Positions 26,354 through 61,679 of a stretch of 64,000 nucleotides of DNA are shown here, piece after piece. Numbering within the stretch: the stretch's first letter is position 1; each line of letters begins with the position of its first letter. The position numbers and the translations under genes were made by a program. The DNA lies in IMG/VR virus record IMGVR_UViG_3300029908_000004, positions 1 to 64,000 of that record; one strand, given 5' to 3'. Below the pieces are notes generated by a model. It did no database searches and was not told the DNA's origin. It saw only the letters and a list, made by a program, of their open reading frames with translations.

Positions 26354-26404
26354 TGGTACCGACGACGGGGATCGAACCTGCAACGGCTTTCGCCTCAACT
26401 GATT
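26354..26404 (-). pseudogene. Orphan 3' half of a type II tRNA (Leu-like)
   Basis: Variable arm GGCGAAAGCC, degenerate T arm, CGTCGGT-A-CCA; abuts the CCA of tRNA-Leu(TAG). Confidence 0.7.
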
Positions 26405-26481
26405 TGGTCCGGGAGGTCGGACTTGAACCGACAGAATCGAGTTCCTAAGACTCGCACGTTTGCCAATTACGTCACCCCCGG
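26405..26481 (-). tRNA. tRNA-Leu(TAG) with a short variable loop
   Basis: CGAGT-CT TAG GA-ACTCG; 5-nt variable region; CCGGGGG/CTCCCGG-A-CCA. Confidence 0.85.
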
Positions 26482-26508
26482 TTATTGGTTTCTATAGCAT
26501 GGCAATTT

Positions 26509-26733
26509 TTAGTTAGGTTTAGAGTATAGAAAAACTTGTTCGTTGTTCGGATTACCAAGGTTCATTAAACCATTCTGTATATTTCTCCCCAAGTCATTGG
26601 CTTCTTGGTCCGAATCGGTAGCCCATATCTTATGGGCCCATTCACCCTTACCTAATACTACCAGATGAACTTCATTCTTCAATAACTTTGTTAATTCATT
26701 ATTATTGGTATACTTGATGTGTCTAATAGACAT
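26509..26733 (-). CDS. Hypothetical protein
   Basis: 74 aa; its SD AGGAGG overlaps the anticodon loop of the tRNA 5' fragment just upstream. Confidence 0.6.
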   Translation of the reverse strand: MSIRHIKYTNNNELTKLLKNEVHLVVLGKGEWAHKIWATDSDQEANDLGRNIQNGLMNLGNPNNEQVFLYSKPN

Positions 26734-26740
26734 TGTAGTC

Positions 26741-26779
26741 CTCCTAAGCGTGCGCGTCTTTCAGTTCCACCATCTGGGC
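26741..26779 (-). pseudogene. Orphan 5' half of tRNA-Leu(TAG)
   Basis: GCCCAGATGGTGGAACTGAAAGACGCGCACGCTTAGGAG; stops at the anticodon loop. Confidence 0.65.
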
Positions 26780-26782
26780 TTA

Positions 26783-26974
26783 CTACGCTATCCTTATAAT
26801 TTGGAGCAATTCTTCTTTGCTTCTACAAAAATCGGTGTACAGTTTAGCAAAATCATTTGCTGCCATACAAGTACATCCAGAGAAACTACAACTTACTTTA
26901 TGAGTTCTAGTATGTATTACTTTAATAGCTAAGTCAAGAGTCTCTAGAACTTTCTCGTGTTCATCAAGTGTCAT
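26783..26974 (-). CDS. Hypothetical protein
   Basis: 63-aa ORF with SD. Confidence 0.5.
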   Translation of the reverse strand: MTLDEHEKVLETLDLAIKVIHTRTHKVSCSFSGCTCMAANDFAKLYTDFCRSKEELLQIIRIA

Positions 26975-26983
26975 AAATAACTC

Positions 26984-27366
26984 CTAGAAGTATTCTATTT
27001 TTATATTCTCTTGGGACATCATCTGGTCTACCTTCTTCCAGATTTCTTCATCAGTCATTTCTATGATAACATTACTTTGACCTAGTCTACGTGCTACTTC
27101 TATTTTATGCCAAGCTTTGAACGCAGAGGTATTAACACACTTAACGAACGCCTGTTCTTTGTTCTTGGCTTGGTCTCTACCATCTCTATGCTCAGCTGTT
27201 GCTCCAGAATCAATGTGGATACACCTTACACCATTCTGTTTGGCGTTTCTGTGAATATAGGTCTCCCGACCTAATGCTGACCGCCGTTACCGCCCGTGCA
27301 GAAAGTCTCAAAGGTAAAATCCTTGCGAGTGAGAGTAAATAATAGGTGCTTTTCTTTTTTAGACAT
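26984..27366 (-). CDS. GGQ peptide-release-factor-like protein (RF-1 domain, ArfB-like), interrupted by a 20-nt coding gap
   Basis: Frame 1, 27366-27274: MSKKEKHLLFTLTRKDFTFETFCTGGNGGQH then TAG. Frame 2 resumes at CAC 27253: HRNAKQNGVRCIHIDSGATAEHRDGRDQAKNKEQAF...IKIEYF*. The joined product would be 119 aa. Confidence 0.85.
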
Positions 27367-27949
27367 CTTGATTCCCCTTCTTGTGTTTAGCTAGGTAAGC
27401 AATGGCTTCTTCTAGGAGATGCTCATCTTCATTCAATAAACCTATGGCTGTGTTGCATTTGCTACATAGTAATCCTCTATGCTTCCCAGAGGAGTGGCAG
27501 TGATCCAGAGACAATCTAATCAATTTACCTTGTCTTGTCTTTGTTTCTTTCTCTTTACAGATAGCACACTTGCCTTCCTGTGCTTCATGAAGGTTATTAT
27601 ATTCCTGCCTTGTGACTCCGTACTTAGTTTTCAAGCAACTATTATAAGACTGCTCATATATCTTATCTTTGTTCTTGTGTCTGTTTCTAGTTGTTATCAG
27701 TCCTGTAGACTTGCTCCAGCAGGTTTTACAGATATGCCTTTTTCCTAATCTATCCCTCCGGTCGTAAAATTCACCTGATGTTTTATCAAGCTTGCATTTA
27801 GTACATATTCTTCCGGTTGGAGTTTCCAGTATAGATTTCTGGTATAGATTAAAGCAATTAGTAGAACAGAATGATTTACGGTTTGGTTTTATTTGACTGG
27901 GCTTCTTGGGGTGTACTTTCGTACAGTAGGTACATATTACATTCATCAT
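27359..27949 (-). mobile_element. Endonuclease VII-like HNH homing endonuclease gene (HEG3)
   Basis: LKTKYGVTRQEYNNLHEAQEGKCAIC...LSLDHCHSSGKHRGLLCSKCNTAIG; N-terminal zinc fingers. Confidence 0.9.
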
Positions 27950-28074
27950 GTACCTATATAGTATGTGACCTCCGTTACCTTTCTGTGTTGTCCACCCTTA
28001 CCGCCTGTACAGAAGGTCTGAAACTCAAAGTCTTTCCTTGTCAGAGAGAATAAGAGGTGTTTCTCCTTAGACAT
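27946..28074 (-). pseudogene. Original 5' part of the release-factor-like gene, truncated by HEG3
   Basis: MSKEKHLLFSLTRKDFEFQTFCTGGKGGQHRKVTEVTYYIGT*; breaks at CACAGAAA, which is repeated at 27246-27253. Confidence 0.85.
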
Positions 28075-28093
28075 AACTAACTCCTGTTGGGAG

Positions 28094-28333
28094 CTAGCTT
28101 AACCCCCCAACCTTCCAGTCCGTATGTAATAAGTCTTTATGTCGTAAGGTTGTAAACATACGGGAAACTTTCCATAGACGAGAGTCATCCATAAGTGAGA
28201 TTATACTATCTACTTGATAACCTTTTGTCTTTGGCAACCATACAACCACTTTTACTCCAGTTGGTTGATAATACTTAGCATCCAATTCTTGGAGTTCACA
28301 CTGAACATATAGCTCTTCTTCTTTTCCAATCAT
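28094..28333 (-). CDS. Hypothetical protein
   Basis: 79-aa ORF. Confidence 0.55.
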   Translation of the reverse strand: MIGKEEELYVQCELQELDAKYYQPTGVKVVVWLPKTKGYQVDSIISLMDDSRLWKVSRMFTTLRHKDLLHTDWKVGGLS

Positions 28334-28336
28334 ACA

Positions 28337-28639: not shown

Positions 28640-28659
28640 AAATTCTCCTTGGTGGAAGC

Positions 28660-31141: not shown

Positions 31142-31218
31142 TGGGAGCCCTAGTAGGATTCGAACCTACCTAATCCATCTACAGTAAACTGTTTAGGAAA
31201 CAGTGCTGGTATAGGGCC
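31142..31218 (-). tRNA. D-armless tRNA-Arg(CCT)-like RNA with a long variable region
   Basis: GGCCCTA/TAGGGCT acceptor; only TACCAGC before ACTGT-TT CCT AA-ACAGT; canonical T arm; CCA. Confidence 0.65.
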
Positions 31219-31244
31219 TTATCAATTATTGTGGTCTCTTAGAA

Positions 31245-31321
31245 TGGTGCACCCGGAGAGAGTCGAACTCCCGGCCTTTTCGTTCGTAGCGAATTGCTCT
31301 TGTCCACTGAGCTACGGGTGC
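31245..31321 (-). tRNA. tRNA-Arg(ACG)
   Basis: TTCG-CT ACG AA-CGAA; CCA. Confidence 0.92.
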
Positions 31322-31837
31322 TTATTTCTCACTACGGGCTAACCAACCAGCTAGGTACTTAGAATACTTAGCGGGATCAGTGCTTACCAGATGTTCATAG
31401 TAAACCTTTTGCTGTAGCCTAATAATTGGTAGTAAATAATTTCTTTCTAATTCAGTATATCCTATTGTAGAAGGATTTAAACTACCATCTGCTTTTATCT
31501 TGGCACCTAGTGAAATCAAAGCTTTCTGTAATATTAGTATTGCCTCCTTGGGAGAAGCATTAACAGCTATATCAAATATCTTGTTTGCTATGTCTTGCGT
31601 TGGTAATCTATTAATAGCTGTAGCTAACCAATAATCATTGGAATATATCTTCTTAGCATATTCTAATGCTTCAGCAGTGTCCATGGTATAGAAACCATCA
31701 CTAACTGCCTTAGGATGTGCACTACTGTTGATACCAAATCTAGCCTGAGCTCCATCGGGTTCTGTGGTAACTACACCAGTTCTGGCATAGTCCTCGGATA
31801 ACATCATGAAATCGAATGCTGAATCAAAGGTGTTCAT
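31322..31837 (-). CDS. Glycoside hydrolase family 108-like peptidoglycan hydrolase
   Basis: FDFMMLSED...DGAQARFGI...IYSNDYW...FDIAVN...ILQKAL...DG...GWLARS. Confidence 0.8.
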   Translation of the reverse strand: MNTFDSAFDFMMLSEDYARTGVVTTEPDGAQARFGINSSAHPKAVSDGFYTMDTAEALEYAKKIYSNDYWLATAINRLPTQDIANKIFDIAVNASPKEAILILQKALISLGAKIKADGSLNPSTIGYTELERNYLLPIIRLQQKVYYEHLVSTDPAKYSKYLAGWLARSEK

Positions 31838-32362: not shown

Positions 32363-32678
32363 TATTAGTCTCTTTCATTTGCTCGAACTTAGATATTGAT
32401 GCTTTCCTATTACAAGAACTACACCTCACATATTTAATAGGAACATCAATTAGCCCTAAAGATAATGGATGTTGTCTGCACTTGCCAACCACTGTCTTAT
32501 CTACCTTTGTTACACCACAACAATGAAATGCAGTGTCACCAGAGATCAAGTCTCTAGCTCGTGGTCTCCACCAGTGATATTCTACATCTATAATTATTGG
32601 ACGATAGGAGCTTATCCTTAAAATCTCTCCACAACTACATTTACGAGCGTACCATATCTTTTCCATGAGAGTTTTCAC
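32349..32678 (-). CDS. Cys-rich paralog family member 1
   Basis: WYARKCSCGEILRI...CSSC..KASISKF. Confidence 0.7.
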   Translation of the reverse strand: MKTLMEKIWYARKCSCGEILRISSYRPIIIDVEYHWWRPRARDLISGDTAFHCCGVTKVDKTVVGKCRQHPLSLGLIDVPIKYVRCSSCNRKASISKFEQMKETNNGTL

Positions 32679-32985
32679 TATCCACCATTAATTCAAATTT
32701 AGATATATGTGCCCTCTTAGAACAAGACATACAATTTAAATTTAAGATACCTACACAAGATTTATGCATGTAATGGATCGTATTACAATCTTTAAGTGTT
32801 TTTTTATCTACCTTAGTTAATTCGCATCCATAAAAACTAATATCCCCATTTATAAGTTCTTTATGGCTAGGTATCCAAATTTTAATACCAATTAGATTTA
32901 AACGATGGAGTGATAATGGATGGGGAGTCTTTATTCTAAGAACCTCCCCACAACTACATTTACGGGCGTACCATAATTCTTTCGT
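32641..32985 (-). CDS. Cys-rich paralog family member 2, with ACG at the start position
   Basis: Manual translation (T/M)KELWYARKCSCGEVLRI...CMSCSKRAHISKF; SD AAGGAG lies 6 nt before the ACG; no in-frame ATG upstream. Confidence 0.6.
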   Translation of the reverse strand, partial: TKELWYARKCSCGEVLRIKTPHPLSLHRLNLIGIKIWIPSHKELINGDISFYGCELTKVDKKTLKDCNTIHYMHKSCVGILNLNCMSCSKRAHISKFELMVDSENSHGKDMVRS

Positions 32986-33001
32986 ATGATTCTCCTTAGA
33001 A

Positions 33002-33078
33002 TGGAGTTCCCGGAGAGGCTCAAACTCTCAACCTAAGGGTTAGAAACCCTTTGCTCTGTTCAATTGAGCTACGGGAAC
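33002..33078 (-). tRNA. tRNA-Arg(TCT)
   Basis: AAGGG-TT TCT AA-CCCTT; CCA. Confidence 0.93.
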
Positions 33079-33084
33079 TTATAT

Positions 33085-33408
33085 CTATACATCAGGCAAT
33101 GAGTTAAACTTTGATACCGAAACTCTACTTTTACAGCTAGAGCAAACGAAGTTAAAAAACCGATAATAACTCTCTGGGTATAGTTTATGCATTGTCTTAT
33201 CTATTTCTGTTAGTTCACAGTCAAATAGTTTAGCGTGTTTATTAAAGCTTTTCATTTCGGGTCTCCAAACACATAGTCCTTTTCTACCAGCAGTAGTGTC
33301 TAGATTACTAAATAAAGGCTCATGCATACATATTCTTATTATTTGACCACATTTACAAATAGCTGCCATCCAATGTTCTTGCATATAAACTCTTTGTGGC
33401 GGAGACAC
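33085..33408 (-). CDS. Cys-rich paralog family member 3
   Basis: WMAAICKCGQIIRI...CSSCKSRVSVSKF. Confidence 0.65.
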   Translation of the reverse strand: MSPPQRVYMQEHWMAAICKCGQIIRICMHEPLFSNLDTTAGRKGLCVWRPEMKSFNKHAKLFDCELTEIDKTMHKLYPESYYRFFNFVCSSCKSRVSVSKFNSLPDV

Positions 33409-33862: not shown

Positions 33863-33889
33863 TGGCTCCGACTTAGGGATTCGAACCCC
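33863..33889 (-). pseudogene. Orphan tRNA 3' end (Gln-like)
   Basis: GGGGTTCGAATCCCTAAGTCGGAGCCA. Confidence 0.65.
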
Positions 33890-33900
33890 AATAAACAGCT

Positions 33901-33986
33901 TGGCTGGGAAGGAGGGACTCGAACCCACACGTCTTTCGACACTGGTTCCAAAGACCAGCGCGTCTAATCCATTTCGCCACTTCCCA
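33901..33986 (-). tRNA. tRNA-Gln(TTG) with a long variable arm
   Basis: CTGGT-CT TTG GA-ACCAG; U1-A72, G73; variable arm TGTCGAAAGACG. Confidence 0.85.
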
Positions 33987-37056: not shown

Positions 37057-37191
37057 GGATATAGTTTGAACAAGATGTTTTTCGATGCTACCATTACACC
37101 AAGCTGGCATAAATTATTAAATGGTGCCAGCCCTGGGATTTGAACCCAGACCCGTTCGTTATGAGTGAAGATAACCTTGCTCTGTCGACCC
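37057..37191 (-). ncRNA. YrlA-like Y RNA 1 (permuted tRNA-like domain)
   Basis: GGGTCGA-N8-GGTTATC, then T arm CTGGG-TTCAAAT-CCCAG, acceptor GGCTGGC/GCCAGCT closed by a loop, D arm GTGT-AATGGTA-GCAT, and 3' CTTGTTCAAACTATATCC pairing with the 5' end. Confidence 0.85.
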
Positions 37192-37214
37192 GTATGATTT
37201 GAATTTAATGATGA

Positions 37215-37348
37215 GGATATGGGGTGGAATTGGGTAAGCCTTTCGGCTGACGGATGTTCTACCATTTGAACTACATCCACTCGATTGAATGGAAGATTGG
37301 ACTCGAACCAATAACATTCTGTTTGAGATAACCAATTTCTATCGACCC
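37215..37348 (-). ncRNA. YrlA-like Y RNA 2
   Basis: GGGTCGA-N8-GGTTATC; ATTGG-TTCGAGT-CCAAT; acceptor hairpin; GTTC-AAATGGTA-GAAC; 3' CCAATT...ATATCC. Confidence 0.85.
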
Positions 37349-39127: not shown

Positions 39128-39156
39128 TGGCGGTAGAGAGGAGAGTCGAACTCCTA
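39128..39156 (-). pseudogene. Orphan tRNA 3' end (Ser-like, G73)
   Basis: TTAGGAGTTCGACTCTCCTCTCTACCGCCA, just downstream of tRNA-Ser(TGA). Confidence 0.6.
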
Positions 39157-39181
39157 AGTCCGGTTAGGGTACTATAGTTTA

Positions 39182-39274
39182 TGGAGGAAGCGGTCCGATT
39201 CAAACGGACGGACCCCATCATTGGGCATCGGAAGTTTTCAGGACTTCTGCATTAGTTCGCTCTGCCACGCTTCC
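39182..39274 (-). tRNA. tRNA-Ser(TGA), C33 variant
   Basis: GAAGT-CC TGA AA-ACTTC; long variable arm; CCA. Confidence 0.87.
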
Positions 39275-39397: not shown

Positions 39398-39485
39398 TGG
39401 AGGAAGGAGAGGGAGTCAGACTCTCAAGTCCCTTACGGGCACCCTGAGTTTCTAGCTCAGTTGGCTTATCGATGCCTACCCTTCC
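39398..39485 (-). tRNA. tRNA-Ser(AGA)-like, degenerate D and T loops
   Basis: CTGAG-CT AGA AA-CTCAG; long variable arm; GGAAGGG/TCCTTCC-T-CCA. Confidence 0.6.
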
Positions 39486-40936: not shown

Positions 40937-40966
40937 TGGAGCTATCGAAGAGTCTCGAACTCTTGA
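40937..40966 (-). pseudogene. Degenerate tRNA 3' part
   Basis: AAGAG-TTCGAGA-CTCTT-CGATAGC-T-CCA with no matching 5' acceptor or D arm. Confidence 0.5.
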
Positions 40967-41006
40967 GTTTTATTTGTAGATTAAAATTGTAGCTGAACTC
41001 CCTCAA

Positions 41007-41277: not shown

Positions 41278-41301
41278 TGGAGCTGAGAGTCGTGATTGAA
41301 C
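41278..41301 (-). pseudogene. Orphan tRNA 3' end (Thr-like)
   Basis: GTTCAATCACGACTCTCAGCTCCA, downstream of tRNA-Thr. Confidence 0.55.
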
Positions 41302-41319
41302 GGACGCTAGCTTATAAGT

Positions 41320-41394
41320 TGGAGCTACCAGAGAGATTTGAACTCCCGATTGACTGATTACAGATCAGTTGCTGTTCCACTGAGCCATGGTAGC
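41320..41394 (-). tRNA. tRNA-Thr(TGT), C33 variant
   Basis: ACTGA-TC TGT AA-TCAGT; GCTACCA/TGGTAGC-T-CCA. Confidence 0.82.
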
Positions 41395-41448: not shown

Positions 41449-41488
41449 TTGACACTTTCGACTAAGTTATTCTATACTATATAGTTAT

Positions 41489-42154
41489 ATGATAACCCTA
41501 AGTATGGAACAATTTACCAAACTAAATAGTCGCTCACCAGTAGAATGTAAATGTGAACAATGTAACAGTCTTTTCTACAGAGTAAAACATGATTTACAGA
41601 CAGCTATTCGTAGGAAAGAACCAATATCATTTTGTTCGCCGAAGTGTTATGGTTTATACAGAAACACTAAGACTACTGTCAAATGTTTATGGTGTAAGTC
41701 TGAAGTAGTTAGAATACCAACTACTAAGAATGTCTTCTGTTCGAGATCGTGTTCTGCAAAATATAATAACACACATAAAACATTTGGGACTAGAAGATCG
41801 AAACTTGAGAGATTTCTAGAAGAACAAATAAAATTATCGTACCCCAATTTGGAGCTTATATGCAATAGCAAATCAGTCATCGGTTCAGAGTTAGATTTCT
41901 ATTTCCCGAGGCTCAGATTGGCGATAGAACTCAATGGTATTCTGCACTACGAACCAATCTATGGGACAGATAAATTCTCTAAAATTGTTGACAATGATAG
42001 ACAAAAAGTTAGATTATGTGAAGCTATGGGTATTGAGCTAGCAGTTATTAATTCTTCGTCATGTTCACGCATGAGCGCAGTATTTAAAACTAAGTATTTG
42101 GGGATAACACGTGAATTAATAGACTCTGTTATTGATAGAGGAAATTTGGGGTAG
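41489..42154 (+). mobile_element. Antisense PD-(D/E)XK/Vsr-like homing endonuclease gene with zinc fingers (HEG4)
   Basis: ELDFYFPRLRLAIELNGILHY; CSPKC/CSRSC repeats; TTGACA-18nt-TATACT promoter at 41449-41478. Confidence 0.8.
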
Positions 42155-42221
42155 ATAGAGAGGTTCAAACTCTCGCTAAGGGAGCCACAGACCCTCGTGC
42201 TTTCATTACACTATACCTACC
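42147..42221 (-). tRNA. tRNA-His(GTG), replacement copy
   Basis: G-1:C73; AGGGT-CT GTG GC-TCCCT; CCA. Confidence 0.88.
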
Positions 42222-44559: not shown

Positions 44560-44781
44560 ATGAACGATAATTTGATTAAAATCTGCCGTAAATGTAAAAT
44601 CCCTAAAGATCGTGACGAATTCCCGTGGAAGAACAAATCCAAAGGAATTCGCCATAATACTTGTAAGCATTGTACACGGGACTATAGTGAAAACTATTAC
44701 AAGTCAAATCAAAATGAACTATCAGAGAAAGCTAAACTACACCAAAGGGAGAAAAGAGCTGCTAAACCAAATGTGGTTTAA
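44560..44781 (+). pseudogene. Truncated antisense homing endonuclease (N-terminal zinc finger only; HEG5)
   Basis: KICRKCKIPK...EF...TCKHC; promoter TATACTATATA at 44534-44544 and SD GAGGTG; no nuclease domain. Confidence 0.65.
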
Positions 44782-46502: not shown

Positions 46503-46519
46503 ACGAATTGTCCTTTTCT

Positions 46520-46595
46520 TGGAGCTGGTGACCGAAGTCGAATCGATAACCTCTACTTTACGAAAGTATTGCTCTTCCAATTGAGCTACACCAGC
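46520..46595 (-). tRNA. tRNA-Thr(CGT)
   Basis: TACT-TT CGT AA-AGTA; CCA. Confidence 0.88.
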
Positions 46596-46604
46596 GTTGA
46601 TATC

Positions 46605-46689
46605 TGGAGCGAGAGACGGGATTTGAACCCGCATGTCTTTCAACGGTAGCTTGGAAGGCTACTGACCAACCGAGTAGGTCATCTCCCGC
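46605..46689 (-). tRNA. tRNA-Gly(TCC) with a long variable arm
   Basis: GTAGC-CT TCC AA-GCTAC; variable region CGTTGAAAGACAT; U73; CCA. Confidence 0.82.
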
Positions 46690-48929: not shown

Positions 48930-49260
48930 AGGTAGACCCTAACCCGGTTAATCAACTAAGAAGATTAACAATACGCTGGGGCAGAAACACTGGCTAGGCT
49001 GGAAATCATCCAGGCTGGCAGAGTGTCGATACCAACAGCGTTTACGTTAACAGTTTTGCCTGTTATTGTTGTATAGTCGTTTAACGTGAGCCTATAGCAC
49101 GACCTGTCATTATTTGCAATTCATACCAAGCGAACCCGGGAGCGGCCCCTATGGTGGACACTCGGGATTCAACCTCCGTGCCCTTATAATTGGTGGACCG
49201 CGAGGGAGTTGAACCCTCGTTAATGGTCATGCTTACAAATAAATCATACAGGTTTAACCG
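48930..49260 (-). ncRNA. ssrA: Circularly permuted two-piece tmRNA
   Basis: The acceptor piece (49260-49191: T arm GAGGG-TTCAACT-CCCTC, GCGGTCC-A-CCA) precedes the coding piece starting GGGCCGC at 49148 (G3:U70). Helix 2 TTGCAAATAA/TTATTTGTAA; pk1-like element; AATAACA-GGC resume context; tag ORF 49060-48965. Confidence 0.85.
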
Positions 49261-49950: not shown

Positions 49951-50213
49951 GGATATAATTGGAATTGGATATTTCGGATATCTTAGTCCAGCAAACATCA
50001 CCAGCGTCAAATATCCTACACCTTTATGTGGTCAAAGGTAACCGCACTGACTTCTCAATACTAGTAGTGTCTTAACCAGACACAGGCTTATAACTATTTA
50101 ACCTCTGTGTTTGCTATTCTTTCAAATAGCTCTTCTCTATCAGAGAAGGTTTAATTGTCCCCGAGGTAACGGGTACTTGCACGGTTATAGAGATAACCAA
50201 GTTCCGGCGACCC
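49951..50213 (-). ncRNA. Long Y-RNA-family member (about 263 nt)
   Basis: GGGTCGC-N8-GGTTATC at the 5' end; GGAACTTGG pairs with the 3' CCAATTCC; ends TATATCC; several internal hairpins. Confidence 0.65.
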
Positions 50214-50802: not shown

Positions 50803-50904
50803 AGATGTAGATTGATAAGGGAATGCCTTTTCCCGAGATGGATCCGGGAACCACTGTAGGCAACAGCTAGCTTGCGCTTTTAGATAACCCTTGTCGTTCG
50901 ACCC
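50803..50904 (-). ncRNA. Y-RNA-family member
   Basis: GGGTCGA-N8-GGTTATC...CCCTTATCAATCTACATCT. Confidence 0.8.
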
Positions 50905-51219: not shown

Positions 51220-51240
51220 TGGTGGACCCAGCGAGAATTG
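51220..51240 (-). pseudogene. 3' fragment of the original tRNA-Ala
   Basis: CAATTCTCGC-TGGGTCC-A-CCA (U70) pairs with the 5' fragment GGGCTCT. Confidence 0.72.
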
Positions 51241-51283
51241 CACCTTTGTAAATGTTATACTATATAGATACGAAAGGATTTGT

Positions 51284-51362
51284 TGGTGGATCGTATGAGA
51301 ATCGAACTCATCTGAAATCTTCTTTGCAAAAGAAGTGACCACCCCGTGCAGTCCCACAACCC
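51284..51362 (-). tRNA. tRNA-Ala(TGC), replacement copy
   Basis: CTTCT-TT TGC AA-AGAAG; G3:U70; CCA. Confidence 0.88.
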
Positions 51363-51368
51363 ATTTAT

Positions 51369-51899
51369 ATGCCAATTCGTAACTGTTTATATTGTAACAA
51401 ACTATTTGATGCTCCACAACGTGATATTACCAGAGGTAATGGTAAATACTGTTCCAGGAAATGCTCTGGAAACTATAAGAGCTCTCTTCCTAGTAAAGCT
51501 CCTATTATAGAGCTTACTTGTGCTTATTGTAATAGTACATTTACTAAGCCTTCCAGATACGTTAGAAAAGCCAATTCTAGAAGCGGATTGCGCTTTTGTA
51601 ACCGTAAGTGTAAAGAACTTGGACAGCGATTAGACGGTGGTAACATAAAAGCTATACAACCATCTCATTTTGGCACAGGTACCGGAGAACACCATTATAG
51701 AGCAAAAGCTCTAAACGCATTCCCAAATAAGTGTAATAGATGTGGATATGATGAATTAATAGGGATCCTTGTTGTACACCACAAGGATCGTAACCGTTCC
51801 AATTCTCATCTATCAAACTTAGAGATTCTGTGCCCAAATTGTCACGCTAAAGAACATTACATTAATCACGATGGATCGTATAGCTCAAAGAGAAAATGA
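51369..51899 (+). mobile_element. Antisense HNH homing endonuclease gene (HEG6)
   Basis: CNRCG...VHHKDRNRSNSHLSNLEILCPNCHAKEH; CSRKC repeats; promoter motif at 51256-51266. Confidence 0.9.
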
Positions 51900-52284: not shown

Positions 52285-52465
52285 AACTACGATTGTTTAC
52301 GTTAATCTCGGTGCTTTACCATTGAGCTACTCAGGCATATGTTTTGGGGCCCGAGGAGAGCATCGAACTCTCATACCCGATTTTGAAAGAAATCGTCTAC
52401 CAGATGTTGTTTCTACCAAGTGAACCTCTTGGGTAATAGATTAACGTTAAACTTAATCGTTTATT
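52285..52465 (-). ncRNA. Permuted tRNA-like RNA with a long closing stem and no GGGUCGA motif
   Basis: T arm GAGAG-TTCGATG-CTCTC, CTCGGGC-C-CCA, short linker, GCCTGAG, D arm GCTC-AATGGTA-AAGC; flanks ACGTTAATCT/AGATTAACGT pair. Confidence 0.7.
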
Positions 52466-56116: not shown

Positions 56117-56143
56117 TGGCACCAGATGGAAGAATCGGACTCC
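56117..56143 (-). pseudogene. Orphan tRNA 3' end (Trp-like)
   Basis: GGAGTCCGATTCTTCCATCTGGTGCCA, downstream of tRNA-Trp. Confidence 0.55.
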
Positions 56144-56166
56144 TGAGTCCTGATACTTAAATTCTT

Positions 56167-56240
56167 TGGCACAAGCACCAGGATTTGAACCCGTACGAAC
56201 TGTTTTGGAGACAGTCATGCTACCGTTACATCATGCTTAT
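56167..56240 (-). tRNA. tRNA-Trp(CCA)
   Basis: ACTGT-CT CCA AA-ACAGT; G73; CCA. Confidence 0.92.
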
Positions 56241-56986: not shown

Positions 56987-58687
56987 TTACTCCGCTTCTG
57001 CTTCTTCAGTTTCCAATACTTCCGTTTTCCCTGAAACGAATTGGGCAATCAACGAAGGCACATTGGTATCGAATCCAACCACGTCCAACGAACGTACATC
57101 GTTTGGATCTGCGATCGAGAATCCAGTTGCTGTCATCCCGATGACAATCTGATGAGCGTTACGTCCAGAACTCTGACGATAGCTCTCCAAAGCGCTAAAT
57201 ACGTGTTTAGGTCCTGCCCAAGTCTCGTTGTCAGTGATGTTGACAAACACATCGACTGGCATCTTCTTTTCTTGTGCATCCTTATATGGAAGTGAACAAT
57301 CTGTTCCTCCCCACCCTGTGCGTAGTGCCTTGGATATTGCTGCGTCTAGCTTCATGGATTTAACCAATCCAACATCAATCATCTTGGTGTTGTAGGAAGC
57401 AACGTGATGCCATGGCTCATTATGCATGATTACCATAGCCATTGCTACTGCACCCATGATTGGTGACATGTTTGGACAACCAACAAGATTTCCCCATCCC
57501 ATTGAGCCGGAACAATCCAAGCCAATGTAATAGTTCAAATTGGTGGTTTCAGCATTCTTAAACGTCTTATAGAACGCTGCGTCCATAGCATCCAAAACTG
57601 GTTTCACCACTGTCCAAGTCAACGAGCCACGAATGCCATGACCAGTTTGATAGGTTAACATAGCATTCAGAACAGTTAGTGGGTGAACACGACTACGTTG
57701 CAGATATTCCTGATCCGACAGACGTGTTACTACTAGCTTTGACGCCTCTGATAGAGGAGCTAACAGCTTGATGCTACTCATCTTACCAAGGTTCCTGATC
57801 ATTGCGTTCATGGGCATTTTCTGAAGCAATGCCTCCCAAACTGCAACGTGGTTCAATGCCTCTGTAGGGATCATTTCGCGAGTGAGGTTGTACTTCTGAA
57901 TCGCTGAAATGATTACCTTTGGGTCTTTTTCATTCTTCATTGCCTCGAACTGCTTAATCAGTTCTGGCAAGTCCTTCTCTAAATCGGTTGCTCCGTGCAG
58001 ACCTTTGGTAGCCCAATCAAACAAGGCTTTCTGCCCATTCGACAACGTAGCATGGGTACCTGCATGGGTGGCACGAAGGATGTCGCGATGGCTCCATCCT
58101 TGTGTTCCATCCACACGCCGTGATTGGTATTTCACCATCTGATAAGCCAGTTTCTGCTCATCTTTCTGTGTGTACCAATCTGCTACGCCGTTGCGTAGTG
58201 ACCTATTCCAACGCATCTTTGCGGCACCTTCGGCCTGTTTTGACCGCATGCCTTTCAGATATTCCATTAGTTGGAACAAATGCGTTCCGATACGTGCTAC
58301 GTCTGGCAGTTTATCCAAGGCGTAACCACGAGTGGATTTGTCACCGAATGCTATACACTGTGCCAACGCGAACAGGGCATAGTCATTCTTTGGAGCCCGG
58401 CCAGATACAGAGATATCGACAATCGTTTTTACTGTCTTCTCTCCATCTGCCGAAATACAGCGTTCAACGCACTTTGCGTTGTCACGCGTCAACTTGTCGG
58501 CACCAACATAATAAGTGCCACCTTCGCTTCCAAGAATTATAAATCTCTGGAGTCGGTCCCAGTCACTCAGTTCAAAAACATAACCTCCAGCGTTATTCTG
58601 AACTTGATTCTTTTCTGGGAATGGTTCACTTTGAGGAATTGTTGGCTTCATCGCCCCATACACATTTGTTAGGTTGGGTTTCTTCAT
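56987..58687 (-). CDS. rsr: Ro60/Rsr TROVE-domain RNA-binding protein with a vWA domain
   Basis: QVQNNAGGYVF...DRLQRFIILGSEGGTYY...KYQSR..GWSHRDILRATH...MIRNLGKMS...SRVHPL...LDCSGSM...GGTDCSLP...TDNETW...VVGFDTNVP. Confidence 0.96.
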   Translation of the reverse strand: MKKPNLTNVYGAMKPTIPQSEPFPEKNQVQNNAGGYVFELSDWDRLQRFIILGSEGGTYYVGADKLTRDNAKCVERCISADGEKTVKTIVDISVSGRAPKNDYALFALAQCIAFGDKSTRGYALDKLPDVARIGTHLFQLMEYLKGMRSKQAEGAAKMRWNRSLRNGVADWYTQKDEQKLAYQMVKYQSRRVDGTQGWSHRDILRATHAGTHATLSNGQKALFDWATKGLHGATDLEKDLPELIKQFEAMKNEKDPKVIISAIQKYNLTREMIPTEALNHVAVWEALLQKMPMNAMIRNLGKMSSIKLLAPLSEASKLVVTRLSDQEYLQRSRVHPLTVLNAMLTYQTGHGIRGSLTWTVVKPVLDAMDAAFYKTFKNAETTNLNYYIGLDCSGSMGWGNLVGCPNMSPIMGAVAMAMVIMHNEPWHHVASYNTKMIDVGLVKSMKLDAAISKALRTGWGGTDCSLPYKDAQEKKMPVDVFVNITDNETWAGPKHVFSALESYRQSSGRNAHQIVIGMTATGFSIADPNDVRSLDVVGFDTNVPSLIAQFVSGKTEVLETEEAEAE

Positions 58688-59331: not shown

Positions 59332-59452
59332 AGATATAAATTTGACTGGATGTTTTAGAGTGTCCTGCCAATTAGACGATGCCGGTTACCCGGTAGAGAG
59401 ATTCGAACTCCCATAACCCGCTCCATAGGCGATAACCCAATCGGGTCGACCC
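59332..59452 (-). ncRNA. YrlA-like Y RNA 3
   Basis: GGGTCGA-N8-GGTTATC; GGGAG-TTCGAAT-CTCTC; acceptor hairpin ACCGG-GTAA-CCGG; D arm GTCT-AATTGGC-AGGAC; 3' ATATCT. Confidence 0.85.
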
Positions 59453-59502
59453 ACTAGATAAATTCATTTGCTCCCTAGGAGCGCTTTACATTCTTATGGT
59501 GT

Positions 59503-59565
59503 GGATATAAACAACTTAGTCAGGAAGTTTATCAAAGTAATAAGGTAATCCTAACTATTCGACCC
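59503..59565 (-). ncRNA. Minimal Y-RNA-family member
   Basis: GGGTCGA-N8-GATTACC...CCTGACTAAGTTGTTTATATCC; shares its 3' 17 nt with the 59097 copy. Confidence 0.75.
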
Positions 59566-59688
59566 AAACCATTTCCTATGCGAGGAGCAATAACAATATA
59601 ATAAAGAGAACTGGGTGAAGGTTCCAGAAAGCCAGAATTAGTGCTCCCTTTCCTAGTAGGGCAAGTAGAATTAGAATTAATATCATAA

Positions 59689-59919
59689 TTACCTCTCAAT
59701 TGTTGTTTCTTCTTCTTCTTTGTGTTTATTTCTTAGAGAGAGAATCATACGGGAAACTTCTTCTGCCGTTAACATTACGTCTCCCATCCTTCTGAACGCT
59801 TCTGCTAAGTTAGTAAGTGTTAGGTCGTAAAGGGTATCCATCCCATTTTCCACAATTTCCTTTACTCCACTTTCTTTCTTTTGATCCACAAACCATTTAT
59901 CCCAAAACATAGTATTCAC
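59689..59919 (-). CDS. Hypothetical protein
   Basis: 76-aa ORF. Confidence 0.55.
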   Translation of the reverse strand: MNTMFWDKWFVDQKKESGVKEIVENGMDTLYDLTLTNLAEAFRRMGDVMLTAEEVSRMILSLRNKHKEEEETTIER

Positions 59920-59955
59920 CTTAAGTGTTTCTACTTCCCGTAGTATTCTCTAAAT

Positions 59956-60032
59956 TGGCTGAGAGGGAGGGATTCGAACCCTCGGAATCTCTGGCTTAAC
60001 AGGCCAGCGCATTACCACTTTGCTACCTCTCA
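59956..60032 (-). tRNA. tRNA-Asn(GTT)
   Basis: CTGGC-CT GTT AA-GCCAG; G73; CCA. Confidence 0.93.
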
Positions 60033-60454
60033 TCATTGTTACAACTTTCTTTCTCACGTGGTAACTTTATGATACCTTTTGGTTTATTAGATTTGTATTT
60101 AGTATTGAGTTCATCAGTACCCATACATATATAATGTCCATTAAGTGGATGTTCTGGTAATTCATCTAACATAGCCATAGCTAACCTATTGAAAATGAAG
60201 TCTTTAAGGTATTTAGATTTCTTCAATTTCCCTAAATTGTGAAAGCTATAGCCGAGTCTAGAGGAACCATTTGTTCTATGTTCCCATCTACGAAACATCT
60301 TACCATTAACTATCTTACCGTCTATCTCAGCTATGAATAGATGTTCAGCTCTCATTCCTGTACGTTGTATATAAGAATGGGCTAATATCTTTACCTTGTG
60401 ACCATCTTTGGTAATGTACTTTTCTTTATTCATAATGAGGAATAAACTTTTCAT
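60023..60454 (-). CDS. Hypothetical protein
   Basis: 143-aa ORF. Confidence 0.55.
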   Translation of the reverse strand: MKSLFLIMNKEKYITKDGHKVKILAHSYIQRTGMRAEHLFIAEIDGKIVNGKMFRRWEHRTNGSSRLGYSFHNLGKLKKSKYLKDFIFNRLAMAMLDELPEHPLNGHYICMGTDELNTKYKSNKPKGIIKLPREKESCNNDER

Positions 60455-60680
60455 TTGCTTCGTTACGTAATGTAACTCTACCAGTTAAACCAGATTTTAC
60501 GCTGGTTAGGGTATAGACACCTTTAGTTTCAGATCTGGTTATAGTTACTTCCTCTTCTATATGGAAGGGTAGACGTTTGTAATAGTCCATGTCAACTATT
60601 ATTTCCATTCCATTGTCACTTAATAGTTGAACTGTTACATCACCCATTGCACCTATGTACATTATTCCACCTATAAACAT
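60426..60680 (-). CDS. Hypothetical protein
   Basis: 84-aa ORF. Confidence 0.5.
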   Translation of the reverse strand: MFIGGIMYIGAMGDVTVQLLSDNGMEIIVDMDYYKRLPFHIEEEVTITRSETKGVYTLTSVKSGLTGRVTLRNEANEKFIPHYE

Positions 60681-60687
60681 GTTGTAC

Positions 60688-60978
60688 CTACTGACGTTTC
60701 AACTCTACATCTTCAAGCCAGAACGTAACTGTCTGTAATACTTTTGTAAAATCATGAGTTATACTTGATACTCTTCCAATACCGTGACCTCTTTCACTAG
60801 GCATCGCATCAAACACTGCTAGTGAAACAGAATCTGGTATCGTAAATCTTAGATTATCCCCAATTGCTGGTATGGCTTCAATTGTGGGCGTTAGTTCCGC
60901 TTCCATATATACACTTGAGTGTTTGTGATCGCTCTGCTTCCAACCAACAATGGCTTTCATATTCCCCCTATGCAACAA
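60688..60978 (-). CDS. Hypothetical protein
   Basis: 96-aa ORF. Confidence 0.5.
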   Translation of the reverse strand: MLHRGNMKAIVGWKQSDHKHSSVYMEAELTPTIEAIPAIGDNLRFTIPDSVSLAVFDAMPSERGHGIGRVSSITHDFTKVLQTVTFWLEDVELKRQ

Positions 60979-61028
60979 ATCCCTCTAATTATAGAGGGAT
61001 TGGTAGAGTTAACTCATCTACACCCTCA

Positions 61029-61634
61029 TTATTTACGCAAGTTCCCCCATACGCTTGAACTGGCGTTGAGATCGACGGTATTGTAGGTTTCCATTCCCAT
61101 GTCTTTACTATTTAGTATAGTATGATTTTGTGTAAATTGGAAATCATGATAATCATTTACTAAATGTATGCTTGTGCCTTCGTACGCGGCGGTCTCTTTT
61201 AACCCGATAGCCGCACCAGAAAAGGTGAAATCTTTTACTATCAGTATATCAAGATCTTCATAAATTTCTGTCTGTACATTAACTATTTCATAGCTCATTC
61301 CTAATCTTGAGCTGTGGTCCTCTAATTCACGAACAACCAGTGGAAAGTTAACAGCAAATATATAACCATATACCTTTACATAGGTTATATCGTCTTTAAC
61401 TTCCAGACTTCCAAAGTTAATGATACCAACCGGTCTTTCCGCGTTATGAGAACGAAAGTCATAATTACAGTTGACTGGTGTTCCCTCCAAGGTCGGCAAT
61501 GCCTTGATTGTGCCTGACTCTGTTAGGATAACCTTTTTACCGTTGGTTCCCTTTGGTGTTCTTGTTGAGACAACGCCAATAACTGTTAATATTCCTTCAA
61601 AATATCTCTTGTTAGGATGAGCTTCTGTGAGCAT
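61029..61634 (-). CDS. Prohead-protease-like protein
   Basis: LPTLEGTPVN...H...VGII...GYIFAVNFP...LGMSYEI...FTFSGAAI.LKETAAY..TSI; start placed after the tRNA remnant. Confidence 0.55.
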   Translation of the reverse strand: MLTEAHPNKRYFEGILTVIGVVSTRTPKGTNGKKVILTESGTIKALPTLEGTPVNCNYDFRSHNAERPVGIINFGSLEVKDDITYVKVYGYIFAVNFPLVVRELEDHSSRLGMSYEIVNVQTEIYEDLDILIVKDFTFSGAAIGLKETAAYEGTSIHLVNDYHDFQFTQNHTILNSKDMGMETYNTVDLNASSSVWGNLRK

Positions 61635-61652
61635 TGTAACAGTCCTCAAGAT

Positions 61653-61679
61653 TGGGAGCGGAGGTTGGATTTGCACCAA
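61653..61679 (-). pseudogene. Orphan tRNA 3' end (Met-like)
   Basis: TTGGTGCAAATCCAACCTCCGCTCCCA shares the CCGCTCCCA end with the adjacent tRNA. Confidence 0.65.

What the first reader, a model, noticed from the sequence alone, without database searches (positions are those of the whole stretch)
26354..61679. Recurrent orphan 3' ends directly downstream of a tRNA with the same apparent identity
Seen: T-arm-plus-CCA remnants follow Leu (26354), Gln (33863), Ser (39128), Thr (41278), Trp (56117), Met (61653) and even the tmRNA acceptor piece (49152-49182), with matching discriminator or acceptor ends. These cases have no nuclease next to them. Inference: repeated in-place replacement of tRNA genes by diverged versions, through recombination near the T arm or via since-lost HEG cassettes, consistent with an arms race against anticodon nucleases.
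Basis: partly seen in the sequence, partly recalled or inferred. Interest (0 to 1): 0.62.

Follow-up and report, generated by a model that had tools for sequence, protein, structure and literature searches.

The report
Leftover tRNA ends in phage tRNA island
A 215-kb phage carries, just after about eight of its tRNA-type genes, broken end pieces of a second gene for the same amino acid, which look like debris from gene gain and loss rather than a new kind of working element.

Summary
T-arm + acceptor + CCA pieces lie 0-26 nt after tRNA-Leu(UAG), Gln(UUG) and Ser(UGA). Weaker or degenerate ones follow Thr(UGU), Trp, a non-canonical tRNA-Met and the tmRNA acceptor piece. I found more: after tRNA-Ala(UGC), after tRNA-Met at 64032, and a gutted tRNA-Thr at 40937. 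The strict motif occurs 33 times on this strand against 0.1 expected, and the remnants' acceptor ends resemble same-amino-acid tRNAs best in 5 of 6 cases.

Two details are wrong. The Ser discriminator does not match (G against U). An HNH homing endonuclease gene sits 95 nt from tRNA-Thr(UGU), and another sits 7 nt from tRNA-Ala.

Only distant relatives exist (about 50% protein identity). They keep the intact genes as clade-typical versions, and hold both tRNA-Gln(UUG) types intact. One has a decaying Leu-like element and a tmRNA-like remnant plus an HNH gene at the matching loci.

Best reading: these are pseudogene debris from tRNA/tmRNA gene duplication, insertion and deletion, with homing endonucleases involved at some loci. 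Replacement by diverged alleles under an anticodon-nuclease arms race is not shown. No RNA data could be obtained. Other "orphans" in the island are parts of Y-RNA-like genes next to a phage Ro60 gene.

The parts
26405..26481 (-). Intact tRNA-Leu(UAG), 77 nt, without the long variable arm expected of Leu.
   Evidence: ARAGORN and Rfam 58.8 bits. Relative G002 has a 78-nt counterpart.
26354..26404 (-). Leu remnant: the 3' half of a long-arm (class II) tRNA-Leu. It holds the 3' anticodon-stem strand, a GGC-GAAA-GCC variable arm, a T arm (4/5 pairs), CGTCGGT, A73 and CCA.
   Evidence: Best match of 166 is the element after tRNA-Leu(UAG) in G002 (38/47). Acceptor end is most like own Leu(UAA).
26145..26347 (-). 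tRNA-like gene with a 104-130 nt insert. GTTCACG pairs with CGTGAGC; perfect T arm, A73, CCA. Not an orphan.
   Evidence: ARAGORN intron mode calls it.
33901..33986 (-). Intact tRNA-Gln(UUG), 86 nt, with a long variable arm; U1:A72, G73.
   Evidence: 85-86-nt counterparts in G002 and G004.
33863..33900 (-). Gln remnant: the 3' 38 nt of an ordinary (class I) tRNA-Gln. It runs from the 3' anticodon-stem strand to CCA and abuts the upstream CCA directly.
   Evidence: 29/37 to own Gln(CUG) and 28/38 to G002 class I Gln(UUG), with a compensatory T-stem pair. No exact match in 185,579 prokaryote genomes.
39398..39485 (-). Degenerate tRNA-Ser(AGA)-like gene (T loop TCTGACT, U73). It is a paralogue of the Ser(UGA) gene 123 nt downstream.
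   Evidence: Only relaxed ARAGORN calls it.
39182..39274 (-). Intact tRNA-Ser(UGA), 93 nt, U73.
   Evidence: Same acceptor stem as Ser(UGA) in relatives.
39128..39181 (-). Ser remnant: perfect T arm AGGAG/TTCGACT/CTCCT, CTCTACC, G73, CCA. The 26 nt before it are long enough for an anticodon-stem strand plus a variable arm.
   Evidence: Its top three matches are tRNA-Ser of relatives. No exact match in prokaryote genomes, and in metagenomes only the same phage.
41489..42154 (+). HNH homing-endonuclease-like gene with its own promoter-like site (41449-41478). It is wedged between tRNA-His (42147-42220) and tRNA-Thr(UGU).
   Evidence: PHROG HNH/homing endonuclease, E 5e-14 to 7e-9. Promoter match 11/12.
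41320..41394 (-). Intact tRNA-Thr(UGU).
   Evidence: Same acceptor stem as in G004.
41278..41312 (-). Thr remnant, degenerate. It folds as a minihelix (acceptor-like stem + T-arm-like hairpin) and ends AGC-U-CCA like all Thr tRNAs here.
   Evidence: Fold z = -2.3.
40937..41000 (-). Internally deleted tRNA-Thr pseudogene: GCTAC..., 22 nt, perfect T arm, CGATAGC, U73, CCA.
49191..49253 (-). Acceptor piece of a permuted (two-piece) tmRNA-like gene, ending GCGGTCC-A-CCA.
   Evidence: Rfam RF04321, 42.5 bits, E 3e-7, below the 47-bit cut-off. 25/31 identical to the G004 tmRNA acceptor end.
49152..49183 (-). tmRNA remnant inside the spacer between the two tmRNA pieces. It folds as a minihelix with G1:C72, G2:C71, G3:U70, A73 and CCA.
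   Evidence: 24/31 identical to the acceptor piece 3' end. The G004 spacer is only 4 nt and has no remnant.
49010..49148 (-). Start of the tmRNA coding piece. GGGCCGC pairs with GCGGTCC. The tag frame is atypical.
51284..51362 (-). Intact tRNA-Ala(UGC), 79 nt.
51220..51283 (-).
   Evidence: 41/59 identical to 49191-49253 (D3, 97, 105). 23/30 identical to the element after tRNA-Ala in G002.
51369..51899 (+). HNH homing endonuclease gene, 7 nt from the 5' end of tRNA-Ala.
   Evidence: Pfam HNH 22.2 bits, PHROG E 2e-21.
56167..56240 (-). Intact tRNA-Trp(CCA).
56117..56144 (-). Trp remnant, the weakest case: T loop TCCGATT, 4/5 stem pairs, ATCTGGT, G73, CCA.
   Evidence: No specific match in relatives.
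61686..61756 (-). Non-canonical or pseudo tRNA-Met(CAU), with a GGGC/GCCC anticodon stem and T loop ATCGTTA.
   Evidence: Only relaxed ARAGORN calls it; no Rfam hit.
61653..61683 (-). Met remnant: TTTGG/TGCAAAT/CCAAC, CTCCGC, then U-CCCA.
   Evidence: 25/30 identical to the 3' end of a G002 tRNA-Met with the same rare T loop; 20/30 to the gene just upstream.
63992..64000 (-). Start of a further fragment (63992-64020), GGCTCT + T-arm piece + CCA, after tRNA-Met 64032-64108. It runs over the window's end.

Best explanation
The pieces are pseudogene debris: what is left of second copies of tRNA and tmRNA genes that once lay directly behind a gene of the same identity.

Proposed course of events:
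1. In this clade of huge phages, tRNA islands often hold two genes for the same anticodon or identity next to each other.
2. Once one copy is dispensable it is eaten away by deletions. Some cases are 5' truncations that leave a '3' half'. Others are internal deletions that leave an acceptor + T-arm minihelix. In the tmRNA case, about 2 kb of other genes, with a fresh acceptor piece at its far end, now separates a degenerate acceptor-piece copy from the tmRNA gene; I read this as an insertion.
3. The 3' end probably survives because it directly abuts the ribosome-binding site of the next gene.
4. Breaks made by HNH homing endonucleases, repaired through short homologies, are the likely source of at least some events.

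Shown: the pieces exist, are non-random, are homologous to same-identity genes, and have counterparts in relatives. HNH genes sit next to two loci here and one in G002.

Inferred: that the pieces have no function, the order of events, and the part played by the endonucleases.
For: 1. Non-random, same-identity pieces.
2. A graded series of decay. T stems have 5/5 pairs in Gln and Ser, 4/5 in Leu, Trp and Met, and 3/5 in Thr. The copy after Ala is nearly unrecognisable. This is expected of relics of different ages, not of one working design.
3. The shapes differ between loci: 3' halves (Leu, Gln, Ser), minihelix-like internal deletions (Thr 41278, Thr 40937, the tmRNA second copy, the fragment after Met 64032), a whole degenerate tmRNA acceptor piece after Ala, and a doubled 3' end at Met.
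4. Relatives show the earlier stages. G002 and G004 have both tRNA-Gln(UUG) types intact. G002 has a full-length but broken Leu-like gene after its tRNA-Leu(UAG), and that gene is the best match of our Leu remnant.
5. The surviving genes are the clade-typical ones.
6. Duplication at the DNA level happens in this island. Arg(ACG) and Arg(UCU) share flanks (D5), and Ser(AGA)-like and Ser(UGA) are tandem paralogues.
7. The only two HNH genes of the island adjoin debris-bearing tRNAs, and G002 has an HNH gene after its Ala remnant.
8. Precedent: T6 SegB cuts inside tRNA genes at a motif whose reverse complement I read as the T-loop sequence (my reading, not stated in the paper). It drives recombination-dependent, microhomology-bounded amplification of tRNA segments that collapses without selection (PMC13096335).
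Against: 1. The Leu, Gln and Ser remnants all begin within a few bases of the 3' side of the anticodon loop. Random deletions would not do this, though it is a post-hoc count of three.
2. No 5' remnants were seen next to intact tRNAs. The bias towards 3' ends needs the ribosome-binding-site argument or a directed mechanism.
3. The Leu and Ala/tmRNA remnants resemble the matching G002 elements (81% and 77%) more than expected for neutral DNA in phages that share only about 50% protein identity. This could mean constraint, or exchange of tRNA cassettes between phages.
4. All other copies of this phage found in public data are 99.93-100% identical, so there is no test of constraint.
5. No RNA data could be obtained.
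Confidence: 0.6

Rival explanations
1. Each locus held one tRNA gene that was overwritten in place by a diverged, nuclease-resistant allele, through recombination near the T arm or on a homing-endonuclease cassette that was later lost. The driver is an arms race with host anticodon nucleases.
For: - HNH genes next to tRNA-Thr(UGU) and tRNA-Ala(UGC), each followed by a remnant on the far side of the tRNA, and an HNH gene at the G002 Ala locus.
- The SegB precedent (PMC13096335).
- The surviving Leu, Gln and Gly tRNAs have unusual architectures.
- The phage encodes a CCA-adding-enzyme-like protein.
Against: - The surviving genes are conserved, clade-typical versions.
- Relatives carry both Gln(UUG) types intact, so the pair predates the loss.
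- Breakpoints lie at the anticodon loop, not the T arm, in the three best cases.
- Five of the seven listed loci have no detectable nuclease gene nearby. Besides the HNH gene at Thr, an EndoVII-type gene (27359-27949) lies about 880 nt upstream of tRNA-Leu(UAG).
- Nothing here bears on anticodon nucleases.
Confidence: 0.22
2. The remnants are kept because they do something. They might be decoys for proteins that bind or cut tRNA 3' ends, 5' hairpins that stabilise the downstream mRNA after tRNA processing, or, for the tmRNA spacer piece, an alanine-accepting minihelix.
For: - Perfect T arms in Gln and Ser.
- The tmRNA second copy and the Thr remnant fold as minihelices (z -1.9 and -2.3), the former with G3:U70.
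- The Leu and Ala/tmRNA remnants resemble elements at the matching loci in a distant relative.
- The phage also encodes Ro60, Y-RNA-like tRNA mimics and a CCA-adding-enzyme-like protein.
Against: - Decay is graded and the shapes differ between loci.
- T arms are degenerate in Thr, Ala and the tmRNA copy.
- Most remnant folds are no better than shuffled sequence.
- No promoter-like or terminator-like site coincides with them.
- The G004 tmRNA has no such piece.
Confidence: 0.12
3. They are attachment-site scars: 3' tRNA segments duplicated when an integrase-borne element inserted into a tRNA gene.
For: tRNA 3' fragments of this kind are the classic signature of integration in prokaryote genomes (bioRxiv 10.1101/2022.07.05.498093). 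The starting points (anticodon loop, T loop) match known integrase sublocations; this last point rests on my own knowledge.
Against: - The remnant and the intact gene share no identical core, and their acceptor strands are incompatible (Gln: CTTCCCA against AGTCGGA).
- Only 0-26 nt lie between them, so there is no element.
- No integrase was found near any locus.
- The Ser and Gln remnants match no tRNA in 185,579 prokaryote genomes.
Confidence: 0.03
4. They are the 3' halves of split or permuted tRNA genes that pair with 5' halves encoded elsewhere.
For: Some other T-arm + CCA pieces in the island are followed by a complementary 5' strand (37122, 52345). The tmRNA here is permuted.
Against: - For the listed remnants, no complementary 7-mer followed by a D arm exists within 6 kb upstream.
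- The pieces that do have partners are better explained as Y-RNA-like modules next to Ro60 (PMC4201824).
Confidence: 0.02

Closest known systems
Homing-endonuclease-driven rearrangement of phage tRNA regions (T4/T6 SegB; PMC13096335)
   Same: A free-standing endonuclease gene sits among phage tRNA genes. The enzyme cuts inside tRNA genes. Repair through short homologies creates and then collapses partial or whole tRNA duplications.
   Different: The enzymes here are HNH, not GIY-YIG SegB. Their cutting was not tested. Most remnant loci have no endonuclease gene. No tandem repeat units remain.
Tandem duplication and random loss of tRNA genes in mitochondrial genomes, which leaves tRNA remnants (PMC3326299)
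   Same: Redundant tRNA copies decay next to a working copy and leave recognisable fragments. Relatives show the intermediate stages.
   Different: This is a phage island with protein genes between the tRNAs. Survival is strongly biased towards 3' ends. Endonuclease genes are involved at some loci.
tRNA 3' fragments at the ends of integrated elements (att sites) in bacteria and archaea (bioRxiv 10.1101/2022.07.05.498093)
   Same: An orphan tRNA 3' portion lies downstream of an intact gene of the same identity.
   Different: There is no shared identical core, no element between the two, no integrase, and no match to any sampled host tRNA.
Bacterial and phage YrlA Y RNAs with a tRNA-like domain (PMC4201824)
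   Same: This explains the other T-arm + CCA 'orphans' in the island (37122, 52345, 59392): a T arm, a closed acceptor-like stem and a D arm, in a genome that encodes Ro60.
   Different: It does not explain the seven listed remnants. Rfam YrlA scores are far below the cut-off (26.6 against 69 bits).

Membership tests
tRNA gene (Rfam RF00005 / ARAGORN) | Full cloverleaf that scores above threshold. | tested here: not met
   None of the listed remnants gives a tRNA hit, even at E up to 10 or with default ARAGORN. Relaxed ARAGORN only merges them with parts of the neighbouring tRNA.
tRNA pseudogene debris (duplication and loss) | The piece is homologous to a tRNA of the same identity as the adjacent intact gene. 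| tested here: met
   A same-amino-acid tRNA ranks first in 5 of 6 cases. Best matches among 166 sequences: same identity or the matching element in a relative for Leu, Gln, Ser, Ala/tmRNA and Met; not for Thr or Trp.
tRNA pseudogene debris (duplication and loss) | Relatives keep both copies intact or at an earlier stage of decay. | tested here: met
   Both Gln(UUG) types are intact in G002 and G004. G002 has a full-length broken Leu-like gene after Leu(UAG). Not seen for Ser, Thr or Trp.
tRNA pseudogene debris (duplication and loss) | No selective constraint on the piece. | not testable with these tools
   All other copies of this phage are 99.93-100% identical. The nearest relatives share about 50% protein identity.
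Integrase attachment-site scar | An identical core repeat shared by the intact gene's 3' end and the fragment. | tested here: not met
   The Gln remnant is 25/34 identical to its neighbour, needs a 4-nt gap, and has an incompatible acceptor strand. Repeat family D4 gives 63%.
Integrase attachment-site scar | An integrated element with an integrase lies between the repeats. | tested here: not met
   Spacers are 0-26 nt. No integrase was found among the neighbours.
Homing-endonuclease-associated tRNA rearrangement | An endonuclease gene within about 1 kb of the tRNA. | tested here: inconclusive
   Met for Thr(UGU) (95 nt) and Ala(UGC) (7 nt), and for G002 Ala. For Leu there is only an EndoVII-type gene about 880 nt away. 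Not met for Gln, Ser, Trp, Met and the tmRNA.
Homing-endonuclease-associated tRNA rearrangement | The enzyme cuts inside tRNA genes at or near the breakpoints. | not testable with these tools
   This needs in vitro cleavage mapping.
Permuted two-piece tmRNA (Rfam RF04321) | Score at or above the 47-bit cut-off. | tested here: not met
   42.5 bits, E 3e-7 for the 501-nt search. Relative G004 scores 70.6 bits.
Permuted two-piece tmRNA (Rfam RF04321) | The acceptor piece (T arm + CCA) comes before a coding piece whose 5' end pairs with it, including G3:U70. | tested here: met
   GGGCCGC pairs with GCGGTCC over 7 bp with G3:U70. The tag frame is atypical.
YrlA-type Y RNA (for the other orphans 37122, 52345, 59392) | Rfam RF02553 at or above 69 bits. 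| tested here: not met
   26.6 bits.
YrlA-type Y RNA (for the other orphans 37122, 52345, 59392) | A T arm, a closed acceptor-like stem and a D arm, in a genome that encodes Ro60. | tested here: met
   Ro60: TROVE + vWA, E 1e-39 and 2e-47. Module anatomy seen in the sequence and the fold. A repeated GGGTCGA...GGTTATC motif recurs (D6).

The most novel reading that the evidence does not exclude
The 3' remnants are not junk but a kept class of tRNA-end mimics. They would be 3' halves and acceptor + T-arm minihelices, including an alanine-type minihelix in the tmRNA spacer. Released when the upstream tRNA is processed, they would act as decoys or substrates for proteins that recognise tRNA 3' ends: host tRNA-targeting toxins, the phage CCA-adding enzyme, or the Ro60 / Y-RNA system. 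This would explain why similar pieces sit at the matching Leu(UAG) and Ala/tmRNA loci of a phage that shares only about 50% protein identity.
Probability: 0.1. Interest if true: 0.7.

Novelty: new variant of a known kind. Interest (0 to 1): 0.38.

Why it matters
Phage tRNA islands are now seen as counter-defence against host enzymes that cut tRNAs. How these islands gain and lose genes is poorly documented.

This phage gives a dense fossil record, with at least eight loci at different stages of decay. A distant relative shows earlier stages, and homing endonuclease genes sit at some of the loci. That makes it a useful natural case for how tRNA sets turn over in huge phages, and for which copies win: here, the structurally unusual ones.

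On present evidence it does not reveal a new mechanism or a new class of RNA.

Tried and rejected
- Megablast and blastn against 50,697 phage records found only isolated tRNA matches.
- tblastn of a helicase gave at most 36% identity.
- An IMG/VR scan with Ro60 found nothing, and one with RNase H found only unrelated loci.
- Word searches with two small neighbouring proteins gave only this phage, plus one 43%-identical protein whose contigs have no DNA on file.
- Eleven loci of the same phage were 99.93-100% identical. An apparent 'variant' contig differed only in gene calls.
- The AAA ATPase alignment gave 42 IMG/VR loci at 51% identity or less. Most have no tRNAs nearby.

Exact-pattern scans:
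- The Gln remnant in IMG/VR and the Ser remnant in metagenomes hit only the same phage.
- The Ser and Gln remnants in prokaryote genomes gave nothing. This counts against a host-derived or att-site origin.

Explanations rejected:
- Split or trans-paired tRNA halves: no partner 5' halves exist.
- Segmental duplication of tRNA-Gln together with its downstream ORF: the two ORFs are unrelated, and the similar flanks may be no more than ribosome-binding sites.
- Promoter or terminator roles: counts are at chance level and none coincides with a remnant.
- The G002 element after tRNA-Ala as a working tmRNA: only 16.9 bits.
- RtcB: absent.

Full report
**What the window is.** The window is the first 64 kb of a single 215,291-bp contig, a JGI metagenome record, rated 100% complete as a virus. 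It encodes a DNA polymerase, ribonucleotide reductase, a helicase and similar phage genes.

All 30 tRNAs that ARAGORN calls lie on the minus strand between 24,058 and 65,367 (28 of them in the window). Rfam adds a tRNA-His at 42147-42220. All 31 encode CCA. The genes are spread out. Nearly every tRNA is followed within 8-20 nt by a ribosome-binding site and the start codon of a small ORF.

**Checking the observation.** I scanned both strands of the whole genome for a 5-bp stem, a TTCRANN loop, the matching stem strand, then 7 nt, one nt and CCA.
- With 4 or more stem pairs, the motif occurs only on the minus strand of the island: 24 times inside called tRNAs and 9 times outside.
- Markov simulations of the island give 0.1 such motifs. 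A relaxed loop adds 11 more against 2.4 expected.
Leu, Gln and Ser are strong. Thr and the second tmRNA piece are degenerate. Trp and Met appear only with the relaxed loop.
- Over acceptor strand plus discriminator, a same-amino-acid tRNA ranks first (ties included) among the 31 tRNAs for Leu, Gln, Ser, Thr and Trp.

- The Ser remnant has G73 but its neighbour has U73.
- The 'tRNA-Met' ahead of 61653 is non-canonical. Default ARAGORN and Rfam do not call it.
- An HNH gene lies next to tRNA-Thr.

**Not every T-arm + CCA piece is an orphan.**
- 26145-26172 closes a 203-nt tRNA-like gene with a 104-130-nt insert.
- 31142-31169 closes a compact tRNA-like sequence with an Arg(CCU)-type loop and no D arm.
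- 37122-37149 and 52345-52372 are each followed by a 5' strand that pairs perfectly with their acceptor strand, and then by a D arm. 59392 has the same layout with a GNRA-closed stem.
- The island encodes a Ro60 orthologue (TROVE + vWA), and Rfam gives weak YrlA hits at two of these places. I therefore read them as Y-RNA-like tRNA mimics of the kind described for bacteria and phages (PMC4201824).
- 49191-49218 is the end of the acceptor piece of a permuted tmRNA-like gene (42.5 bits, E 3e-7).

**Anatomy of the true remnants.**
- *3' halves.* The Leu piece (51 nt) has the 3' anticodon-stem strand, a GGC-GAAA-GCC variable arm, a T arm and an acceptor strand. That is the 3' half of a long-arm tRNA-Leu, whereas its intact neighbour lacks the long arm. 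The Gln piece (38 nt) runs from the 3' anticodon-stem strand to CCA and touches the CCA of the neighbour. The neighbour is an 86-nt tRNA-Gln(UUG) with a long variable arm, while the remnant is of the ordinary short-arm type. The Ser piece has a perfect T arm, and the 26 nt ahead of it fit a stem strand plus a variable arm.
- *Minihelices.* The Thr piece and the second tmRNA piece fold as an acceptor-like stem stacked on a T-arm-like hairpin. The tmRNA one has G1:C72, G2:C71 and G3:U70. A gutted tRNA-Thr lies at 40937-41000, and a similar fragment follows tRNA-Met 64032.
- *After tRNA-Ala.* The 64-nt spacer is a degenerate copy (41/59) of the whole tmRNA acceptor piece, including the bases after CCA. 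The tmRNA gene now lies 2 kb further on. About 2 kb of ORFs, tRNA-Asp and a fresh acceptor piece separate the old copy from the coding piece.
- *At Met.* A 3' end whose best match is a tRNA-Met of a relative (25/30, sharing the rare T loop TGCAAAT) sits behind a different 3' end that pairs better with the 5' strand.

So the debris is of several kinds and at several stages of decay.

**Relatives.** Every other contig of this phage is 99.93-100% identical. The nearest proteins are 43-55% identical. Using an alignment of the AAA ATPase (44778-46634), I fetched 42 loci of related huge phages and then the tRNA regions of three of them: G002 (332 kb), G003 and G004. They show the following.
- *The surviving genes are the clade-typical ones.* 85-86-nt long-arm tRNA-Gln(UUG) genes with the same acceptor stem occur in G002 and G004. 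G002 has a 78-nt short tRNA-Leu(UAG). tRNA-Thr(UGU) and tRNA-Ser(UGA) share acceptor stems with relatives.
- *Both Gln(UUG) types exist intact in relatives.* G002 has the ordinary and the long-arm gene 4 nt apart. G004 has both in one cluster. The Gln remnant matches the ordinary type, with the same TTAT variable loop and a compensatory C:G to U:A change in the T stem.
- *Leu.* In G002, tRNA-Leu(UAG) is followed after 7 nt by a full-length but broken bacterial-type tRNA-Leu. This is the best match of our Leu remnant among 166 sequences (38/47).
- *Ala.* In G002, tRNA-Ala(UGC) is followed by a chimeric pseudo-tRNA whose 3' end is tmRNA-like and 23/30 identical to our remnant. An HNH gene follows directly (Pfam 25.2 bits).
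- *tmRNA.* G004 has a clear permuted tmRNA (70.6 bits) with only 4 nt between its pieces and no remnant.

**Nucleases.** Pfam and PHROG scans of some forty ORFs of the island, together with the precomputed Pfam calls for 23.4-43.9 kb, found four nuclease-type genes:
- two HNH genes (41489-42154 and 51369-51899), which are the only credible plus-strand genes in the island; the first has an 11/12 promoter-like site;
- one EndoVII-type gene (27359-27949);
- one RNase H gene.

Each HNH gene adjoins a tRNA that has debris on its far side. A published case gives a mechanism: T6 SegB cuts within tRNA genes at RAWTSGAAC, and drives recombination-dependent tRNA segment amplification with microhomology at the repeat junction; the amplification collapses when selection is removed (PMC13096335). 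The reverse complement of that motif is the T-loop sequence GTTCSAWTY. This last point is my reading, not the paper's. Whether the HNH enzymes here cut tRNA genes is untested.

**Explanations weighed.**
- *Best fit: duplication or insertion followed by deletion of a redundant same-identity copy.* It accounts for the graded decay, the mixed shapes, the intact pairs and half-decayed copies in relatives, and the conservation of the surviving genes.
It mistakes which copy is the lineage's own, and its arms-race motive is untested.
- *Attachment-site scars.* Excluded by the lack of a shared core, of any intervening element, of an integrase and of any matching host tRNA.
- *Split tRNA halves.* Excluded because no partner 5' halves exist.
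- *A function for the pieces.* Not excluded. The Leu, Gln and Ser pieces all start at the 3' side of the anticodon loop. No 5' remnants are seen. Two remnants resemble the matching elements of a distant relative more than neutral decay would predict. Two fold as minihelices. I could obtain no RNA data.

**Verdict.** On present evidence this is tRNA and tmRNA gene debris in a fast-turning phage tRNA island: a variant of known gene-decay and endonuclease-linked rearrangement, and of moderate interest. The surroundings may be more notable than the remnants themselves: Ro60 with several Y-RNA-like genes, a permuted tmRNA, and tRNAs with switched architecture that are conserved across a clade of huge phages.

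Noticed in passing
window 56987-58687 (-); 37086-37348, 50190-50213, 50881-50904, 52311-52434, 59361-59453 (-): The phage encodes a Ro60 orthologue (TROVE + vWA). At least five Y-RNA-like elements share the motif GGGTCGA...GGTTATC. Three of them have a tRNA-like module (T arm, closed 7-bp acceptor stem with CCA in the loop, D arm). Rfam YrlA scores are far below the cut-off.
   Followed up: partly
window 33901-33986, 46605-46689, 26405-26481 (-); L057:7599-7684, L058:1544-1628, L055:13248-13325: Some tRNAs have switched architecture. Gln(UUG) (86 nt) and Gly(UCC) (85 nt) have a long variable arm, and Leu(UAG) (77 nt) lacks one. The Gln and Leu forms recur in phages that share only about 50% protein identity, so they are old and presumably functional. 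Which enzymes charge them is unknown.
   Followed up: partly
window 49010-49253 (-): A permuted (two-piece) tmRNA-like gene scores just below the Rfam cut-off (42.5 against 47 bits). ARAGORN predicts a 31-residue tag that does not end in the usual Ala-Ala. Relative G004 has a clear permuted tmRNA (70.6 bits).
   Followed up: partly
window 26145-26347 (-): A tRNA-like gene has a perfect acceptor stem and T arm but 104-130 extra bases between the D-arm region and the T arm. It also holds an 8-nt loop AAUCUAAU that could present CUA. Whether this is an intron, a giant arm or a broken gene is not resolved.
   Followed up: partly
window 31142-31218 (-): A compact 77-nt tRNA-like sequence follows tRNA-Arg(ACG). 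It has a 7-bp acceptor stem, an anticodon arm with loop UUCCUAA (CCU, Arg), a perfect T arm and C73-CCA, but no D arm.
   Followed up: no
window 24058-60032 (-): Almost every tRNA is followed within 8-20 nt by a ribosome-binding site and the start codon of a small ORF of unknown function. This suggests long transcripts in which tRNA processing sets the mRNA ends.
   Followed up: no
L056:3419-3717 (relative G002): The 332-kb relative encodes a bacterial class A RNase P RNA (189 bits) inside its tRNA array. The Rfam scan of this window at gathering threshold gave no RNase P hit.
   Followed up: no
loci L024, L026, L057, L058 and others (relatives): ARAGORN calls ten tRNAs with anticodon CUA (labelled Pyl) in the related huge phages. 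This hints at amber-codon reassignment or suppression in some of them. None was called in this window.
   Followed up: no
G000:C1 73310-74821 and 84489-86111 (outside the window): There is a CCA-adding-enzyme-like gene (PolyA_pol, 95 bits) and a weak RNA-ligase-like match (23 bits, below the cut-off). No RtcB was found.
   Followed up: partly
window 32612-32656 and 32931-32975; 31238-31329 and 32995-33086: A 45-nt direct repeat (87% identical) lies 319 nt apart downstream of tRNA-Arg(UCU). tRNA-Arg(ACG) and tRNA-Arg(UCU) share their flanks (72% over 92 nt). Both are signs of duplication at the DNA level inside the island.
   Followed up: no
L058:2399-2550 (relative G004): A 150-nt element between two tRNA-Ile genes begins GGGGCGG and ends ACGCTCC-A-CCA, so it has G3:U70 and an alanine-type end. 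It has two T-arm-like hairpins. It is neither a called tRNA nor the tmRNA of that phage.
   Followed up: no
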